This document shows positions 10,873 to 17,164 of a DNA stretch of 64,000 nt, piece after piece; within the stretch, counting starts at the first letter, position 1; every line of letters starts with the position of its first letter. The stretch comes from Auanema rhodensis. Taxonomy: Eukaryota; Animalia; Nematoda. Both the position numbers and the translations under genes were made by a program. The stretch covers positions 13,950,001 through 14,014,000 of the forward strand of contig OZ059899.1 of NCBI GenBank assembly GCA_964057225.1, in the 5' to 3' direction. The notes under the pieces were generated by a model that made no database searches, was not told where the DNA came from, and was given only the letters and a program-made list of their open reading frames with translations.

Positions 10873-11947
10873 TTGTGAACGGTGATGAAAAGTGAAATAG
10901 ACTAGCCGGATTTTTCGAAAAACTTAGATATATTCTGACAACGTTAGTGTTCAAATTTATGTTTGAAGTTGTAATTATGCTGAATAAATAATACTAAAAC
11001 AATAAAATATCATATAACTACTATTACACATATAGGCAAAAAGAGTTGTGTTTATGTGGAAAAAAAGTTAGGTATAAATATGATCCATTTTAATTTTTTA
11101 AAATCAGAAATACAGCTGATACTGTAAAAACACATCACGAATTCCAAGAATGGTTAATTTGATGATAATAGTAAAAAAAAAATTAAAACAGATGAAACCC
11201 AAATTTTTATGAATATAAAATTAAAATTTCATTTTCTTAATTCTCATATCATACAGTTGGCTAGTTAATTTCTGATCAGCAAAGATTAATTGAGTAGAAG
11301 TATTAAAACTTTTAACTTTAATTTAAAACCTAAGTAAACTGAATAATAAAGAAATTTGTATGTATATTGATTTTTTTCGAATCTAAATCATAATAAATCA
11401 AAAAAGAAAAGCTAGATAAATGATTTTTTTTAAATTGTAGAAAAAAATGTTTTTATAGTTTGATAAGAAGAAAAAGTTTTTTATTCAAAACATTACAATT
11501 TATTATTTATAACTTTTTGAAGTAAACAGTACCAGAAATTTGGATAAGTTCAATTAAATTTTAATTTTTCATATTATATTTTGAATCTTCGACGCATATT
11601 CTGCATTTTCATCTTTATCGGCAAATTTGATTATTTGAATGAAATATTGTTGTACGGTATTACTTCTTAAATGTATAGAGTTTGGTTACTTTTGTAACTA
11701 ATAATAAGATATTTTTTATTTTTTAATGTAAAAAAACAATGTTTCTACCAGTCTTTATTCCCAATAATAATATATTTAGTTAAATAATATCTCTCTAATA
11801 CACCTTTCTATTAAACCGTTTAAACATGTAAAAATGAAGTTTTACAATTATTTTTCATGGAATTCATTGAATTCATAAATGGAAAGCTTTCAAGTGAATT
11901 AAACGATTTTGCCTGATGATTATGGGAATATTATTTGTTGGGCATGA

Positions 11948-13828
11948 TCAATCACTACGTGCTCCCTCATCTTCGTCACTTGAAGAATCGTAATTCTTGC
12001 GAACGAAGTTAGCATAGACAAGTGTCTCCGTCTGCAATTCATACATAAACTCATGAAATGGTTGTAACTGCTTTCTAACCTCGAGACGTACAAACTGCAA
12101 GTTGGTACGACGATATCCTGGAAGTTCACGATCCCATAATTGCTGCTGAGCATCTTTGCCTTTGACAGAAACATCATTAGCAAATACAGTCATGAGCAGC
12201 TTTCCAGGTCTATAAGCAAAACATATTTCATGTTTATTGTTTCTTTCATTTTAAATCATTATTTTCAAAAACAAAAAACATATGTTGATTATGATGTAAT
12301 TTACCTGAAAGTGTTGATAACTTTCTTTGTCTGTTTGTAAAGACACCAGCTATCTTGGTTTGTTTCGAAAGAAGCAAAAGAGAATGCTTTTTCGGGTGTT
12401 ACATGGATTGTGGCATATTGGTCTGAGTTTGTCTTATAGGCATTCATGCTGTAGCCACAAGGATCAAAAAGTTCGTCCTGAATTTCAAAGTCGGATGGCA
12501 TCAAGCGATCTATGCCGGATCGCTCAGTACATTCCTTAGCATCATCACAAGCTTCTCTTGTGAAAGTTTTCATCACATTTTCGTCCAGATCCGTCATGAG
12601 AATCTCCAAAGTGCTGTCCTAAACAGAATAATATTTTATAATTTCAATTCATATTGATTCAATTATATTATATTTCCAGCAATTATATCAATATGTATGA
12701 TGATTGAAATATTCCTTTCGATCACATCGAATACAATCAGCTTATTGGATTATATGTTTGAATGAACACGAATAACGCGTGAATATGAAACTTTTTGAAT
12801 AGAAGCCTCAACTTACAGCTGTTTTCTGTGGAAGTGGCTGTTGTTGAATGTGCATAGTATAGAGATACCAGCGATCTTGCTTCAAAGATCCCATACAATA
12901 TGCATGTCCACCTGAAAAGTTCAAGTTTCGATTGTGATTACATCAAAAAAAAAAGTTTGTTCATATTTCGCTTGCTTTCAAAACATTGATCTTATCTTTT
13001 TCTTCTCGTAGTATATTATTATCTTTAACTATTTGACAGTTGTTTGAATGAAAAAAAAAACGTGAGTGGGAGCATTCATAAAACAAAAATTTTGATACGA
13101 AATTTGGCTGACCTTTAATCTCATTTCAAACGAAATAAATTTGATATGAGTTGACATTTATCAACGAAATATAATATATTAATGTCTTTTTGATAAATGC
13201 TTATCTAAGTGATCAGAGTAAAAACGGATTAATTAGTATATTTTATGAAAAAATGATAAAAAAATTGCATACCATCGAAGAAAGAGTCCAAGTACTGAAC
13301 TTCAGAATCAAAATTATAATGCAATTCTGGTTGAAGTTCAGGTCTAAGGAAATTTTTTCTTGAATAATAGACACTAACGACCTGAAATATGGTTAGGTTT
13401 AGGAAGATTAAAATATTATTATCGAACCTTGTCAAGCTGAGCATACTGATCAGCCAATTTAAGAATGACTGGAAGAGCATCGAGAAGTCTTGTAGCTCCA
13501 CATGTCTTCATAATAAGTCGGTGATCAGATACAAACAAGCTGCTTTCACTAAAACAGAAAATAAGTAAGTTGAAAGCTAAGTTTTGATATACCTCAAAAC
13601 ATAGCTGTCAAGGTCTTGCTGATGAGAAGATTGAAGAATCTTGCATCTAGCAATATCTAGCATGGCATCAAGCTCATGTCTTGGAATATCACGAAGAGAA
13701 CAGTTTTCCAAGCCTTGGCTATTGTCGAACCATAACTCTAAGAGCTTCTCAGCTCCTTCAAAGAAGTATTCGTCGACTGAACTGGCCAACTCAGTCACAG
13801 CAGTTTGGGTAGCTATTTGAACGGACAT
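11948..13828 (-). CDS. smd-1: S-adenosylmethionine decarboxylase proenzyme (AdoMetDC/AMD1)
   Basis: FFEGAEKLLELWF, self-cleavage site YVLSE/SSLFV, KTCGAT, YSRKNF, FDPCGYSMN, TIHVTPEKAFSFASFETN. TGA at 11950-11948. Confidence 0.98.
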
Positions 13829-13982
13829 CTGAAGATTGAAATTAAAAATAAGGGTTCTGTAGATAGTTTACTTACTGTTTTTCCTGTATTTTCTGCGAAA
13901 TGGAAGTTAATTATCAACTGAAGATCGGTAATACGATCAAGTTCGAATGTAGGTAATGTGTGTGATGTAAAACTCGGACCCG

Positions 13983-14036
13983 CTAAGGAGGACGAACGTG
14001 AAGGACGAGGATTTGGGTCTCAATATCTGGACCCAT
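13983..14036 (-). promoter_or_regulatory. AUG uORF of smd-1, 17 aa: MGPDIETQILVLHVRPP*
   Basis: ATG 14036-14034 to TAG 13985-13983. It is the only AUG in the leader, is out of frame with the main ORF and ends Pro-Pro-stop. AdoMetDC mRNAs of mammals and plants carry regulatory uORFs. Confidence 0.85.
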
Positions 14037-14155
14037 ACAACCCTGAAAACAAACAAAATGTGAAACACGTTTTTATGAATTATTTTGTATGCAAGCATTA
14101 AATTTTTCCGAATGAACAAGCACAAAAATTTGTTTAAAAAAAAAACAAAAGTTTA

Positions 14156-14239
14156 TGTCATCCGCAGGATTCGAACCTGCGCCCTCCGGAGAGGACTGCG
14201 ACCTGAACGCAGCGCCTTAGACCACTCGGCCAGAATGAC
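14156..14239 (-). tRNA. tRNA-Leu(CAG), within intron 2 of the smd-1 5' leader, same strand
   Basis: GTCATTCTGGCCGAGTGGTCTAAGGCGCTGCGTTCAGGTCGCAGTCCTCTCCGGAGGGCGCAGGTTCGAATCCTGCGGATGACA: A and B boxes, long variable arm, CAG anticodon, downstream oligo-T terminator. Confidence 0.97.
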
Positions 14240-14287
14240 TCTACTAAACGGCATAGAAGACATGGTAGACAAGCAAACCTCTTCTAG

Positions 14288-14524
14288 TCAGCGAAAACGA
14301 GCTTTGTAGTCTCCGCGATCTACTTTTGGTGGAATATCTTCTGCCCAAAGGAACAAACCACACGAGGAATGGGACCACGTGGGGGTAGAGAAATTAGCTT
14401 TGGTGTCTTTCAACAGCTGGATTTTGTCTGCTATTGACCTGAACAACAGTGGGATCAGAATAAGTTTGATATATCAGTGATTATACCAAGATGGGCTGCG
14501 TAGGGCTGTTAGATACCCTGTCAC
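14288..14524 (-). promoter_or_regulatory. AUG-less upstream ORF (candidate GUG start at 14524) ending UGA-CUAG, in frame with the 17-aa uORF
   Basis: Spliced frame VTGYLTALRSPSWSIADKIQLLKDTKANFSTPTWSHSSCGLFLWAEDIPPKVDRGDYKARFR*, bounded 5' by an in-frame TAG (14566-14564), with no ATG. It continues UGA CUA GAA GAG/GGU UGU AUG. Confidence 0.6.
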
Positions 14525-17164
14525 AGCTCCTCTAGTCGGTGAGTTAACAAGTAGAAAGTGAGACTATAGAAGCCTGAAAAGTAAGATTGTAAGTTGAAAA
14601 GTTCAGAGATCAAGAGATCAAACAAATCGGAGGAAATAGCAGAAAGACATGATGCATAATATGAAAGCTATGAAAATAAAATTTGATTATGAGATCAAAA
14701 ATGAATAAAAGTAGAATCGAGTTCTTGAATATATAATCAAGATATTCCAATCCCCCTGCATTATAGAAAAAGTTTAACATCAATCAAGCTGGTTAGCATG
14801 GAATTAAACGGAAAATGTTTCCAGCTCAGTTTAAGATTGAATGCTTTTTGAACATTTTTGAAAGGAAATTATCTTAAGGGGATGCTCTAATGAGCTTTGA
14901 AGATGACATGGGTTGGCTCCACATGAGTCGAAAACGAAAACTGAGCTATTGTTCAAAGAAATAGAGAAACATGATGAGGACATAAAAGATCTGATAATGG
15001 TGGAACTTGTGCTCTCTCGGAGAAAAATGTTTCTGAAATATCGTCTAAAACGGAAACACTTTAAAGCAACAACGAGAAAAAATGGGCGGGAGTATATCTA
15101 TCAAAGATAGAGAGAAAGAAAAATATACAGGGAGAGAGGGAATGAGCAAGGAACAGAGGAAGACAGAAAAAACAGAATAAATAAGGGCGTGCGAGCTAGA
15201 TATATGGATAGTGAGATAGAAGACAATATATATTGAAGAATTTCTGGGAATGGATTCGTATGGCTTCATCTCGTTCACGTAAGACTGGTAAAAGACAACA
15301 AGCTTCCATTTTTGATGAAACTTTTGGAAGAGAAGCAACATGAGAAGTCGCAAATGAATAAGTAGGTTAGGAGAGACAGGAGAGGCAATGAGGTGTAGGA
15401 AGAAGACATACCACTTTCAAATGAAACATGAAGTAAGAAAAAACAAAAAAAATGTTCTTTCATATGAAATAGAAACGGAAAATGGACGAAGAAGGAAAAA
15501 GCAGGAAAGCGAGGTAGAGCCAGAGAGATATATTGGAGAAGTTAGAGTGTGCGAAGGAAACATAATGAACGATAGGAGAGAAAGAGATAGAGAGAGAGAG
15601 AAAGAGAGAAAAGAAAAAGAAAAAAGAGAGAGAGAGAGCTCTTTTAAATAAGAAGAGACATGAATAGACATCTGATCGATTTAGCAGAGCACATTGGAAC
15701 TAGGAGAAGGGGAATACCCCCTTTCTCGGTTCCTATGCCATTCCCAGCATGTATTGCCTGTTGTGGAAACTACGTCACTTCATGCTACATCATAGCTCTA
15801 ACCCATTATTTTCTAAGAAGCATTATATCCATTTCTATATTATCAGCTTCTTAACATCTTTGAGATTTTCTGGGGTACTACATCTCCTATTCTGATTCTA
15901 TCTTTTGATTCGTTTTTTACTTCCCTTCGAGACACAAGCATGTATAATCATATATGTATGTATGACAAGACAAATGAGAAAAAAAATAGAGGTTGGATAA
16001 GAGAGGGATAGGGAACAGACCAAGAAAAAGGAGAAAGAACGAAGAGCGTTCGCCAAAAAACAGCTGTAAGCTTGGCTCTTTTTCGTTCCTCCTTCTCTTT
16101 CTCACAAGCGAATGTTCATTCGTGGCATATTGGCTGTTTTGCTCATTTTTCTCCCATTTTTTTGCTTTTTCGCTTGTTCTTGAGCTTTTCATGTTCCACC
16201 ACGTCAAAACTTATGTATTTTGGTAGTCTCTCTCCCTCTCTATCTCTATCTCTCTCTATCTTGATGGCCAATGTGCAACAACATGCACAAAAAGAGAATG
16301 ACATATACAATATAGAAAATAGTTGTATGGAAAAATCGGATGAAAAGAAACTTTCAGTTATGATGGAGCGAAAATACTCAGAAACGATAATGGGTAATGA
16401 AAGAATGGTAAGATAAAACTTGAGCACACGTGAGGGTTTGGTGATATCATCTAGGCTTGACTTGATTACACAATACGGCCGTCACATTATCGTTATTGTC
16501 TGAGTATGTCAACCACGTCAAAGGTTTCAGAAGATGACAAAAAAAAACTTTTGAAGATCATTTGACTCACAGACGTCATATCTCTAGAATACATAACAAT
16601 AACTGGTAAAGAAGTGAGAGAGAGAGAGAGAGAAAGAGAAAAAAACGAGAAAAATCTCTGTCAGTTGGCAAATATCAGCTGTTTTGTGAACAACTACAAC
16701 AAAATAATTTAAAATTTGAAACACATTCATTGTCTATCCAACTGGAAAAAAAATGAAATTTTAAAAATGTATTTGTAAAAATGGCTTAATCGGTCTGGAC
16801 ATGTATTCTTGCCGACCCTGTCTCTCGTCTATAACAAAAAAAGTCGGAAAACAACTAAGCTGGATAGTTTATCCGACGAAGACATGTTGATTACGATGGC
16901 TTCAGCCTTGGAGATAAGCTTGTAGTAGGTCTGTTGTGTTTTCAAAATGGTAGAAAGCTGGCAAAAGGAATGTGGAAGAGGGAACGAAGGAAAAATGGAT
17001 AGCGAATCCGAAACTGACGGAACATGTATGTTTATTTGGTTCAAAACGACTTTGTTCTTGTGATTGTGGCTACTGAAAGGAGGTAGATGGGGTATAGAAT
17101 TCGTGAACATACTCTTAGCAAAAGTAATAAATTGAAAAAATAGAATGTTAGATGGAGTGCATTA

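What the first reader, a model, noticed from the sequence alone, without database searches (positions are those of the whole stretch)
13983..14573. smd-1 leader: AUG-less uORF joined by UGA-CUAG readthrough to a Pro-Pro-stop uORF, a candidate polyamine-sensing translational switch
Seen: after removing three introns, the ~414-nt leader has exactly one AUG. One frame runs from an in-frame UAG (14566) through near-cognate starts (GUG 14524; later AUA, AUC, CUG, UUG, ACG) to ...DYKARFR-UGA(14290)-CUA-GAA-GAG/GGU-UGU-AUG-GPDIETQILVLHVRPP-UAG. A single UGA thus separates a 62-codon ORF (from GUG) from the 17-codon AUG uORF; readthrough would give an 85-aa peptide. Established: UGA-CUAG is the best-known efficient readthrough context; AdoMetDC is feedback-repressed by polyamines through uORFs (mammalian MAGDIS, plant PS-stop); AZIN1 uses a non-AUG uORF with an eIF5A-sensitive PPW stall and ribosome queuing. 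Inference: high polyamine stalls ribosomes at PP-stop, queuing raises near-cognate initiation, and readthrough feeds more ribosomes into the stall, repressing the enzyme. I recall a short uORF reported in the C. elegans leader but cannot confirm whether this readthrough architecture has been described.
Basis: partly seen in the sequence, partly recalled or inferred. Interest (0 to 1): 0.95.

Follow-up and report, generated by a model that had tools for sequence, protein, structure and literature searches.

The report
Two tandem regulatory uORFs, AdoMetDC leader
The leader of this nematode's polyamine-synthesis gene (AdoMetDC, smd-1) holds two short conserved upstream reading frames, and the first, which has no AUG, is still evolving like a protein-coding sequence, so it is probably translated from a non-AUG start and helps set enzyme output.

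Summary
One frame reads ...DYKARFR-UGA-CUAG...-AUG-GPDIETQILVLHVRPP-UAG.

The window comes from an Auanema-like rhabditid; its AdoMetDC is 88% identical to that of Auanema sp. JU1783. I compared nine nematode leaders, six of them RNA-seq transcript contigs.

- **uORF2** (MGPD...RPP-stop) is a conserved-peptide uORF in clades III and V.
- **The AUG-less ORF (uORF1)** matches an AUG-initiated uORF in Ascaris and an oxyurid (...YKERYS-UGA). All seven Rhabditina leaders lack that AUG, yet the peptide is under purifying selection. Against JU1783, all 10 differences in its last 25 codons fall at third positions, at the synonymous rate of the main CDS.
- **Stop context:** the uORF1 stop is followed by C in five of six lineages.
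- **Frame:** the single-UGA in-frame link to uORF2 occurs in four of six lineages (spacers 15, 21, 21, 42 nt). It is broken in strongylids and a Caenorhabditis-like species; Haemonchus and the Caenorhabditis-like species carry a back-up stop within one codon.

Translation of the AUG-less ORF is well supported. Readthrough is plausible but not shown, and it is dispensable in some lineages. Polyamine sensing is inferred by analogy. I class this as a new variant of known polyamine-uORF control. Another agent in this scan reported an ODC uCC in the same genome.

The parts
14487..14573 (-). Leader exon 1 (putative). The 5' end is set at a consensus TTTTCAG acceptor at 14574. It contains the in-frame UAG (14566-14564) and the conserved motif GGAGCTGTGACAGGG with GUG 14524-14522.
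   Evidence: The exon end matches JU1783. The GCTGTG motif is shared with L002 and Haemonchus. The 5' end is not verified.
14279..14438 (-). Leader exon 2. It carries uORF1, the AUG-less conserved ORF (in frame from 14437), its UGA, and the first 9 nt after the stop.
   Evidence: Exon 2 is 160 nt in both the window and JU1783, with 32 substitutions and no indel. The donor position ..GAAGAG|GT is shared with JU1783 and Haemonchus and supported by transcripts L003 and L004.
14291..14365 (-). The constrained C-terminal 25 codons of uORF1: SCGLFLWAEDIPPKVDRGDYKARFR.
   Evidence: All 10 differences from JU1783 are at third positions: 9 synonymous, 1 Phe/Leu. The C-terminal pattern [YF]-K-x-[RK]-[FY]-[RS]-stop is shared with Pristionchus, Ascaris and the oxyurid; Haemonchus, L003 and L002 share its R-F-R-stop end. 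Different codons are used across these leaders.
14420..14422 (-). AUC in the motif GACAAAAUCC, the best candidate near-cognate start of uORF1 (44 codons before the stop). Other conserved in-frame candidates: ACG 14380, UUG 14356, AUU 14335.
   Evidence: The CAAAATC motif is conserved in the window, JU1783, L002, Haemonchus and L004. It is in frame with uORF1, with no intervening stop, in the first four. The actual start is not determined.
14284..14290 (-). uORF1 stop codon UGA plus CUAG.
   Evidence: It is identical in JU1783. Other lineages have UGA-CAU (Pristionchus), UGA-CAA (Ascaris), UGA-CAG (oxyurid), UAG-CA (strongylids) and UGA-UAG (L002).
14043..14278 (-). Leader intron 2, which contains a tRNA-Leu(CAG) gene at 14156-14239 on the same strand.
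   Evidence: ARAGORN and Rfam tRNA at 53.9 bits. The same tRNA lies in the same intron in JU1783.
13876..14042 (-). Leader exon 3: a 6-nt spacer (GGTTGT), uORF2, and 107 nt down to the intron that immediately precedes the main AUG.
   Evidence: The acceptor position is shared with JU1783 and Haemonchus.
13983..14036 (-). uORF2: AUG, 17 codons MGPDIETQILVLHVRPP, UAG, followed by the conserved CGGGUCC.
   Evidence: Present in all nine leaders, with synonymous variation among distant species. The UGU-AUG-G context is invariant. There are no synonymous changes against JU1783 (P about 2e-4).
11947..13828 (-). Main ORF: S-adenosylmethionine decarboxylase proenzyme, 362 aa in 7 exons.
   Evidence: It is 88% identical to Auanema sp. 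JU1783 P0182. Homologues carry Pfam PF01536. It sits as sister to JU1783 in the tree.

Best explanation
This is the 5' leader of the AdoMetDC (smd-1 orthologue) mRNA of an Auanema-like rhabditid nematode. It carries two tandem conserved-peptide uORFs.

uORF2 has an AUG in a weak UGU-AUG-G context and 17 codons ending RPP-UAG-C. It is the nematode form of the AdoMetDC regulatory uORF with a penultimate proline. It most likely arrests ribosomes at Pro-Pro-stop when polyamines are high or eIF5A activity is limiting. That would block scanning to the main AUG 107 nt downstream and expose the mRNA to nonsense-mediated decay.

uORF1 is older than Rhabditina. It starts with AUG in clade III nematodes and lost that AUG in Rhabditina, yet it is still translated, from a near-cognate codon (best candidate AUC 14422). 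Its conserved end, ..D-Y-K-A-R-F-R, sits on a weak UGA-C stop only 15 nt upstream of the uORF2 AUG. I infer that uORF1 acts through its nascent C-terminus at termination, as a second and weaker arrest or leaky-termination site.

In this genome, ribosomes that read through UGA-CUAG stay in frame and are caught at the uORF2 PP-stop. Readthrough is therefore a likely side route and perhaps an amplifier. It is not the core of the mechanism.

Shown here: the sequence anatomy, homology, coding-type constraint, stop contexts and frame relations. Inferred: translation start, arrest, polyamine dependence, readthrough.
For: - **Anatomy:** reproduced.
- **Identity of the gene and organism:**
- **uORF2:** conserved in nine leaders from clades III and V, with synonymous codon variation and an invariant UGUAUGG context.
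- **uORF1 constraint:** 10 of 10 differences from JU1783 in the last 25 codons are third-position. The third-position change rate is 0.375, against 0.41 in the main CDS.
- **uORF1 C-terminus across lineages:** DYKARFR, NDFKQRYR, DQRNRFR, DKRSRFR, AYKERYS and GYKEKYS. Arg is encoded by CGU, CGA, CGC or CGG and replaced by Lys AAA; Phe/Tyr by UUU, UUC, UAU or UAC.
- **Start codon:** AUG in Ascaris and the oxyurid. There is no AUG in any of the seven Rhabditina leaders, each of which has exactly one ATG, that of uORF2.
- **Stop context:** C follows the uORF1 stop in five of six lineages and the uORF2 stop in all nine leaders.
- **Back-up stops** in two out-of-frame lineages (Haemonchus and L002): UAG CAU UAA and UGA UAG.
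- **Literature:** AdoMetDC uORFs with a penultimate Pro occur across metazoa (PMC2811004). C. elegans smd-1 is a uORF-bearing NMD target (10.1101/2023.09.29.560204) and is treated as a polyamine-responsive uORF gene (PMC13578949). PP-stop (hCMV) and Arg/Phe/Lys-rich C-termini (AMD1 C-tail) arrest termination (PMC13025110).
Against: - There is no expression, 5'-end, Ribo-seq or reporter data for this species; the splicing is inferred by homology.
- The uORF1 start codon is not identified. The N-terminal half of the open frame is not constrained at the amino-acid level (12 synonymous against 11 nonsynonymous codons over the whole ORF).
- The length of the open frame is not longer than in shuffled sequence for most leaders.
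- L004, a basal strongylid transcript, has no uORF1 stop. Its frame runs 12 nt past the main AUG.
- L003 lacks the 5' part of exon 2.
- No uORF was found within 6 kb upstream in Caenorhabditis sp. 36.
- The resemblance of RFR-stop to the AMD1 Arg hook is one of composition only.
Confidence: 0.6

Rival explanations
1. Programmed UGA-CUAG readthrough is the functional link. High polyamine stalls ribosomes at PP-stop, queuing raises near-cognate initiation on uORF1, and readthrough delivers those ribosomes into the stall as an 85-codon fusion, amplifying repression.
For: - Exact UGA-CUAG in the window and JU1783.
- In frame, with a single UGA-C and no other stop, in four of six lineages, with spacers of 15, 21, 21 and 42 nt, all multiples of three.
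- By the tree, these include the deepest branches, so the arrangement looks ancestral.
- Back-up stops where the frame is broken suggest the first stop leaks.
- A readthrough-then-stall precedent exists at the 3' end of vertebrate AMD1 (PMC13025110, PMC8831848).
Against: - Four of six lineages in frame has a chance probability of about 0.10 at 1/3 per lineage.
- CUAG is not conserved outside Auanema.
- Strongylids and the Caenorhabditis-like L002 keep both uORFs while out of frame (spacers 16 and 23 nt), so fusion is dispensable.
- The spacer peptide is not conserved (LEEGC, LEEDC, QLLPARC, QSKLCYC, a 14-residue spacer in Pristionchus).
- uORF2 has its own conserved AUG.
- GUG 14524 cannot be the start in JU1783.
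Confidence: 0.25
2. uORF1 is a positive element, like the plant 'tiny' uORF or GCN4 uORF1. Ribosomes that translate it terminate 15-42 nt before the uORF2 AUG, too close to reinitiate there. They skip the inhibitory uORF2 and reinitiate at the main AUG. The weak non-AUG start would tune how many ribosomes take this bypass.
For: - The gap between the uORF1 stop and the uORF2 AUG is short and conserved: 15-23 nt in most lineages, 42 nt in Pristionchus.
- Plant AdoMetDC mRNAs use a two-uORF logic (PMC2811004).
- uORF1 is only 18 codons in clade III.
Against: - A bypass role needs no conserved peptide, yet the C-terminus is under strong amino-acid constraint.
- If the start is AUC, the ORF is about 45 codons, which disfavours reinitiation.
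- The conserved weak stop context and the back-up stops are not explained.
Confidence: 0.1
3. The exon-2 conservation is not translational. It could be an RNA structure, a protein-binding site or a DNA element such as the CACGTG box or an intronic/promoter signal for the nested tRNA. On this view the open frame and the in-frame UGA are coincidence.
For: - Several leader blocks are conserved at the nucleotide level without a coding pattern: the exon-1 GCTGTG motif, CACGTG, and CGGGUCC after the uORF2 stop.
- uORF2 itself shows excess nucleotide conservation against JU1783.
Against: - Ten of ten differences fall at third positions, at the synonymous rate of the CDS.
- Amino acids are conserved across clades with different codons, including an Arg CGC to Lys AAA replacement.
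- The homologous ORF in clade III starts with AUG.
- There is no significant fold and no covariation, no Rfam hit other than the tRNA, and no competing ORF on the other strand.
Confidence: 0.05

Closest known systems
AdoMetDC (AMD1/SAMDC) regulatory uORFs: vertebrate MAGDIS, the plant tiny plus small uORF pair, and other eukaryotic AdoMetDC uORFs with a penultimate proline (Ivanov, Atkins and Michael 2010, PMC2811004)
   Same: Same gene family and same position in the 5' leader. uORF2 is a short AUG uORF with a conserved peptide whose penultimate residue is Pro, and its C-terminus RRPP-stop looks like an arrest site. The two-uORF layout recalls the plant arrangement.
   Different: The upstream partner is itself a conserved-peptide ORF, not a 2-3 codon tiny uORF. 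It does not overlap uORF2. It lacks an AUG throughout Rhabditina and is in frame with uORF2 across a single UGA in several lineages. I could not see the supplementary alignments of that review, so I cannot say whether the nematode uORF2 is shown there.
uCC (upstream conserved coding region) of ODC and antizyme-inhibitor mRNAs
   Same: It is a non-AUG-initiated ORF of some tens of codons, conserved at the peptide level, in the leader of a polyamine-pathway mRNA, with most of the conservation in the C-terminal part. Another agent in this scan reported a 46-codon AUG-less uCC ending PPP-stop in this same genome's ODC leader (s1-378780, not checked by me).
   Different: It sits in a different gene. 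It ends in R-F-R-stop, not in a Pro-Pro-Trp or PPP motif. It is followed by a second, AUG-initiated arrest uORF. There is no sequence similarity to uCC peptides.
[quoted passage not shown]
   Same: It involves the same enzyme's mRNA and the same logic: a leaky stop, then an in-frame ORF ending in a termination-arrest peptide. The C-terminus is Arg/Phe/Lys-rich (FRK clamp and Arg hook in AMD1; K-x-R-F-R-stop in uORF1).
   Different: That system lies at the 3' end of the main ORF, not in the leader. Its tail is about 127 residues long. There is no sequence homology. Neither arrest nor readthrough is demonstrated here.
hCMV gp48 uORF2 and other Pro-Pro-stop termination-arrest peptides
   Same: uORF2 ends in Pro-Pro-stop, the C-terminal feature that distorts the peptidyl-transferase centre in the hCMV peptide (as summarised in PMC13025110).
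   Different: The peptide is otherwise unrelated, and no structural or biochemical data exist for the nematode peptide.
UGA-CUAG class of efficient stop-codon readthrough in animal genes
   Same: The window and JU1783 have exactly UGA CUAG.
   Different: Here it is in a 5' leader between two uORFs. The CUAG tetranucleotide is not conserved in other nematode lineages; only the C at +4 is. That this motif is efficient in nematodes is my recollection of work in mammalian cells, not something tested here.

Membership tests
AdoMetDC regulatory uORF with penultimate proline | Lies in the 5' leader of an AdoMetDC mRNA | tested here: met
   uORF2 (14036-13983) lies 107 spliced nt upstream of the AdoMetDC start at 13828. 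It is at the same place in six transcript contigs.
AdoMetDC regulatory uORF with penultimate proline | AUG-initiated short ORF whose peptide is conserved between species | tested here: met
   MGPD[IR][EK]T.ILVL[HY].RPP is conserved in Rhabditina. Ascaris has MGPYKTLILVHHRRPP, the oxyurid MGPFKALILIHHRRPP and Pristionchus MPAVINIFLVRFRPP. Synonymous codon variation is present.
AdoMetDC regulatory uORF with penultimate proline | Penultimate residue is Pro | tested here: met
   The peptide ends ..R-P-P-stop in all nine leaders.
AdoMetDC regulatory uORF with penultimate proline | Polyamine-dependent repression of the main ORF | not testable with these tools
   This needs reporters or Ribo-seq with and without spermidine or DFMO. 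The only indirect support is from C. elegans: smd-1 is a uORF-bearing NMD target and is treated as polyamine-responsive (10.1101/2023.09.29.560204, PMC13578949).
uCC of ODC / antizyme inhibitor mRNAs | Conserved ORF without an AUG, started at a near-cognate codon in a conserved context | tested here: inconclusive
   No AUG is present in any of the seven Rhabditina leaders. The candidate AUC in CAAAAUC is conserved and in frame in four leaders from three of the four lineages that have the motif, but the start is not determined.
uCC of ODC / antizyme inhibitor mRNAs | Purifying selection on the encoded peptide | tested here: met
uCC of ODC / antizyme inhibitor mRNAs | Resides in an ODC-homologue mRNA and ends with the conserved Pro-Pro-Trp type pause motif | tested here: not met
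   The host gene is AdoMetDC and the conserved end is K-x-R-[FY]-[RS]-stop. The IPPK in the window is not conserved in other lineages. It may work like a uCC, but it is not a member of that family.
Programmed stop-codon readthrough | Leaky stop context conserved among relatives | tested here: inconclusive
   UGA-CUAG occurs only in the window and JU1783. C at +4 occurs in five of six lineages (about 0.005 by chance if the lineages are independent). CA follows the stop in Pristionchus, Ascaris, the oxyurid and the strongylids.
Programmed stop-codon readthrough | Downstream sequence stays in frame, free of stops, and shows a coding signature up to the next stop | tested here: inconclusive
   It is in frame and stop-free in four of six lineages and out of frame in two. 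The spacer peptide is not conserved. The downstream coding signature belongs to uORF2, which has its own AUG.
Programmed stop-codon readthrough | Measured readthrough product or footprints | not testable with these tools
   No Ribo-seq, proteomic or reporter data were available.
Termination-arrest peptides (hCMV uORF2 type, AMD1 C-tail type) | Conservation concentrated in the last residues before the stop codon | tested here: met
   This holds for both uORF1 and uORF2.
Termination-arrest peptides (hCMV uORF2 type, AMD1 C-tail type) | Peptidyl-tRNA retained on the ribosome at the stop codon | not testable with these tools
   This needs in vitro translation, toeprinting or Ribo-seq.

The most novel reading that the evidence does not exclude
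The ancestral chromadorean AdoMetDC leader encodes one composite sensor: a conserved uORF1, a deliberately leaky UGA-C stop, and an in-frame PP-stop arrest uORF2. Polyamine-dependent slow termination at the first stop both stalls ribosomes and diverts them by readthrough into the second arrest site. In Rhabditina the first ORF has moved to non-AUG initiation, so that queuing behind either stall feeds back on its own start. This would be programmed readthrough acting inside a 5' leader, between two uORFs.
Probability: 0.2. Interest if true: 0.85.

Novelty: new variant of a known kind. Interest (0 to 1): 0.62.

Why it matters
AdoMetDC commits S-adenosylmethionine to spermidine and spermine synthesis, and its translational feedback by uORFs is a textbook case.

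The nematode leader adds a second element: an older, conserved-peptide uORF that lost its AUG in one clade but kept its protein-level constraint. That is a natural AUG-to-non-AUG transition within one regulatory ORF. It brings the non-AUG 'uCC' logic, known from ODC and antizyme inhibitor, into the AdoMetDC mRNA.

Two further features make specific, cheap predictions for termination arrest and leaky termination inside a leader:
- the conserved weak stop contexts (stop-C at both uORFs);
- the frame link in some lineages and back-up stops in others.

These can be tested in Pristionchus, Auanema or Caenorhabditis, where genetics and Ribo-seq are available. If readthrough proves regulatory, it would be a 5'-leader counterpart of the vertebrate AMD1 3' readthrough-stall.

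Tried and rejected
- **Metagenome pattern scan.** None encoded AdoMetDC, so it gave nothing.
- **Pfam scan.** Eight uORF1 or uORF2 peptide pieces at E up to 10 gave no family. A possible kinship with plant AdoMetDC leader peptides, which I recalled from memory (plant '..PLGYS..' against nematode '..P[IV][AG]YK..'), stays untested. A literature search for the plant peptide string found nothing.
- **Protein search.** The 49-aa uORF1 peptide gave no candidate.
- **GUG 14524 as a conserved start.** Rejected: JU1783 has two in-frame stops after it, one at the exon 1/2 junction.
- **Long open frame upstream of the conserved part.** Not significant against dinucleotide shuffles in most leaders (P 0.05-0.9).
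- **ATG depletion.** Each Rhabditina leader has exactly one ATG, but against dinucleotide-preserving shuffles the individual P values are only 0.06-0.4.
The outer GAGGAU/AUCCUC stem exists in Auanema and the strongylids. It is absent in Ascaris, the oxyurid and Pristionchus. Fold z-scores range from -1.3 to +0.9, none significant, and there is no covariation.
- **Caenorhabditis sp. 36.** No uORF2 or RFR-stop ORF was found within 6 kb upstream.
- **Da'dara and Walter 1998.** I could not retrieve this paper on C. elegans AdoMetDC, so my recollection that it reported a short uORF is unconfirmed.
- **Further relatives.** Diploscapter and A. ceylanicum loci were not on record.


Full report
**What is in the window.**

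The minus strand between 11947 and 13828 encodes a 362-aa S-adenosylmethionine decarboxylase proenzyme in seven exons. Its closest relative in the protein collections is Auanema sp. JU1783, at 88% identity. A maximum-likelihood tree places the window protein as sister to JU1783 within Rhabditina. The genome is AT-rich, about 33% GC.

It gives 414 nt with a single ATG at 14036. One frame reads UAG(14566)...GUG(14524)...DYKARFR-UGA(14290)-CUA-GAA-GAG/GGU-UGU-AUG-GPDIETQILVLHVRPP-UAG(13985-13983). A tRNA-Leu(CAG) gene lies in the second leader intron.

**Are the junctions right?**

There is no RNA evidence for this species, but homology supports the junctions.
- The JU1783 locus (L001) has the same three leader exons, the same exon ends, and the same tRNA in the same intron.
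- The Haemonchus contortus genome has introns at the same two positions..GAG|G.TTGTATGG and immediately before the main ATG. It also has one between the GCTGTG exon and the CAAAATC exon.
- RNA-seq contigs with an intronless CDS show the spliced ..AGAG|GATTGTATGG junction (L003, L004). L004 and L132 begin with the 3' end of SL1 (GTTTGAG), so these leaders are trans-spliced and complete.

The window's 5' end at 14573, a consensus TTTTCAG acceptor, remains a guess.

**uORF2.**

The 17-codon AUG uORF is present in all nine leaders examined:
- the window and JU1783;
- L002, whose protein groups with Caenorhabditis;
- Haemonchus;
- L003, Angiostrongylus-like;
- L004, a basal strongylid;
- Pristionchus pacificus (transcript L009);
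- Ascaris (L130, L131);
- L132, whose protein groups with the oxyurid Syphacia.

The peptide ends R-P-P-stop everywhere. Distant species differ by synonymous codons, the UGU-AUG-G context is invariant, and the stop is followed by C and usually by CGGGUCC.

This is the AdoMetDC uORF with a penultimate proline that Ivanov, Atkins and Michael described as widespread in eukaryotes (PMC2811004). C. elegans smd-1 is listed as a uORF-containing NMD target and is treated as a polyamine-responsive uORF gene in a recent Ribo-seq study. This part of the finding is therefore known in kind.

**The AUG-less ORF (uORF1) is real coding sequence.**

Exon 2 is 160 nt in both the window and JU1783, with 32 substitutions and no indel. 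The unconstrained 3' part of the leader, by contrast, is hardly alignable.

All 10 are third positions: nine synonymous and one Phe/Leu. None of 200,000 random-substitution trials gave one or fewer nonsynonymous codons. The third-position change rate among identical-residue codons is 0.375. That equals the 0.41 seen in the main CDS, so the constraint is on the protein, not on the RNA.

Across lineages the C-terminus is kept with different codons:
- DYKARFR-stop in the window and JU1783;
- NDFKQRYR-stop in Pristionchus;
- DQRNRFR-stop in Haemonchus and L003;
- DKRSRFR-stop in L002;
- AYKERYS-stop in Ascaris;
- GYKEKYS-stop in the oxyurid.

These include an Arg CGC to Lys AAA replacement.

In Ascaris and the oxyurid this ORF starts with AUG and is 18 codons long: MHVERPSEQPIAYKERYS and MLFDHSAKEPVGYKEKYS. 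In all seven Rhabditina leaders the only ATG is that of uORF2. The simplest reading is that an ancestral AUG uORF lost its AUG at the base of Rhabditina and has since been translated from a near-cognate codon.

**Where uORF1 starts is open.**

GUG 14524 is excluded as a conserved start, because JU1783 has two in-frame stops after it. The best candidate is AUC 14422 in the motif (G/C)CAAAAUC. That motif is conserved in the window, JU1783, L002, Haemonchus and L004. It is in frame with uORF1, with no intervening stop, in the first four. UUG 14356, ACG 14380 and AUU 14335 are also conserved with JU1783.

The N-terminal half of the frame is not constrained at the amino-acid level. The open frame is not longer than in shuffled sequence for most species.

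**The stop and the frame link.**

The uORF1 stop is UGA-C in the window, JU1783, Pristionchus, Ascaris and the oxyurid. It is UAG-C in Haemonchus and L003, and UGA-U in L002. C at +4 in five of six lineages is unlikely by chance, about 0.005 if the lineages are independent. The exact CUAG is confined to the two Auanema-like genomes.

uORF1 and uORF2 are in frame, separated by that single stop, in four lineages: Auanema-like (15-nt spacer), Ascaris (21), the oxyurid (21) and Pristionchus (42). They are out of frame in Haemonchus and L003 (16 nt) and in L002 (23 nt). Four of six has a chance probability of about 0.10. By the tree, however, the in-frame state includes the deepest branches and survived spacer-length changes.

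In two out-of-frame lineages a second in-frame stop follows at once: Haemonchus UAG CAU UAA and L002 UGA UAG. In L003 the next stop is 10 codons on, inside uORF2. This pattern fits a stop that leaks enough for a fail-safe to matter. In the in-frame lineages the fail-safe would be the PP-stop itself.

It also shows that fusion of the two ORFs is not required, since strongylids keep both conserved peptides without it. L004 is an exception. It has no uORF1 stop, and its frame ends 12 nt past the main AUG.

**Mechanism.**

Shown: two conserved-peptide uORFs, both with conservation concentrated at the C-terminus, both on stop-C contexts, the first 15 nt upstream of the weakly placed AUG of the second.

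Inferred: both act at termination.
- Pro-Pro-stop is the arrest feature of the hCMV uORF2 peptide.
- An Arg/Phe/Lys-rich C-terminus (FRK clamp, Arg hook) blocks eRF1 on the vertebrate AMD1 C-tail, which is itself reached by readthrough (PMC13025110).

The uORF1 end, K-x-R-F-R-stop, resembles that tail in composition only. Slow termination at a weak stop would also raise readthrough. In this genome, then, some ribosomes probably continue in frame to the PP-stop. I rate that as a plausible accessory rather than the core of the switch.

The alternative that uORF1 is a bypass element, as in plants, does not explain its peptide constraint. A purely RNA- or DNA-level explanation is contradicted by the substitution pattern, by the AUG-initiated homologues, and by the lack of fold or covariation signal.

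**Novelty and limits.**

I found no description of a second, non-AUG conserved ORF or of a readthrough link in AdoMetDC leaders.

The element works like the uCC of ODC and antizyme-inhibitor mRNAs but fails membership on gene and motif. Another agent in this scan reported an ODC uCC in this same genome; I did not check that.

All functional statements await Ribo-seq and reporters.

Noticed in passing
window 14156-14239 (-); L001 5687-5770: A tRNA-Leu(CAG) gene is nested, in the same orientation, in the second leader intron of the AdoMetDC gene. It is conserved in position in Auanema sp. JU1783, while the rest of the intron is not alignable.
   Followed up: partly
window 14516-14530 (-): The exon-1 motif GGAGCTGTGACAGGG is identical in JU1783. 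It is recognisable as GGTGCTGTG(A/G)G in L002 and Haemonchus. It is not consistently in any reading frame, and its function is unknown.
   Followed up: partly
window 13976-14036 (-): uORF2 shows no synonymous change against JU1783, where about 6-7 would be expected (P about 2e-4). GGGUCC occurs both right after the AUG and right after the stop, with GACCC between them. The non-coding CGGGUC after the stop is conserved in seven of nine leaders (Haemonchus has CAGGUC, the oxyurid differs). This suggests a nucleotide-level role, either stop context or alternative pairing, on top of the peptide.
   Followed up: partly
window 14376-14381 (-): A palindromic CACGTG (E-box-like) lies inside leader exon 2. 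It is also present in JU1783 and Ascaris, and as CACGTC in L002, but in different reading frames relative to uORF1, so it is not coding conservation.
   Followed up: no
L006 6060-6160 (Caenorhabditis sp. 36): No uORF2 was found within 6 kb upstream. The annotated N-terminus reads ..EQRKSRFYSN directly in frame before the likely true start MPAYSD. It resembles the uORF1 end (DKRSRFR) but has no stop.
   Followed up: no
L004 203-409: In this SL1-bearing strongylid transcript the uORF1 frame has Ser-Arg where relatives have Arg-stop. It runs on for 68 codons, across uORF2, and ends 12 nt past the main AUG. This is either a real overlapping uORF or a contig error.
   Followed up: partly
L003 1-60 versus L007 8158-8230: The Angiostrongylus-like transcript lacks the first ~70 nt of the exon homologous to Haemonchus exon 2, including the CAAAATC motif. 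Haemonchus has an AG (CCCTAAG|GAAAGATCC) at the corresponding point, which suggests use of an alternative 3' splice site.
   Followed up: no
P0176 (Ancylostoma ceylanicum) and P0166 (Panagrellus redivivus) gene models: Public gene models extend the AdoMetDC protein N-terminally by translating the leader. The A. ceylanicum model contains ..EDCMGPDIETLILVLYR. The Panagrellus model contains the +1 frame of uORF2 (..VYGCEAPHPRASPSTSLAGP), which suggests uORF2 also exists in clade IV.
   Followed up: partly
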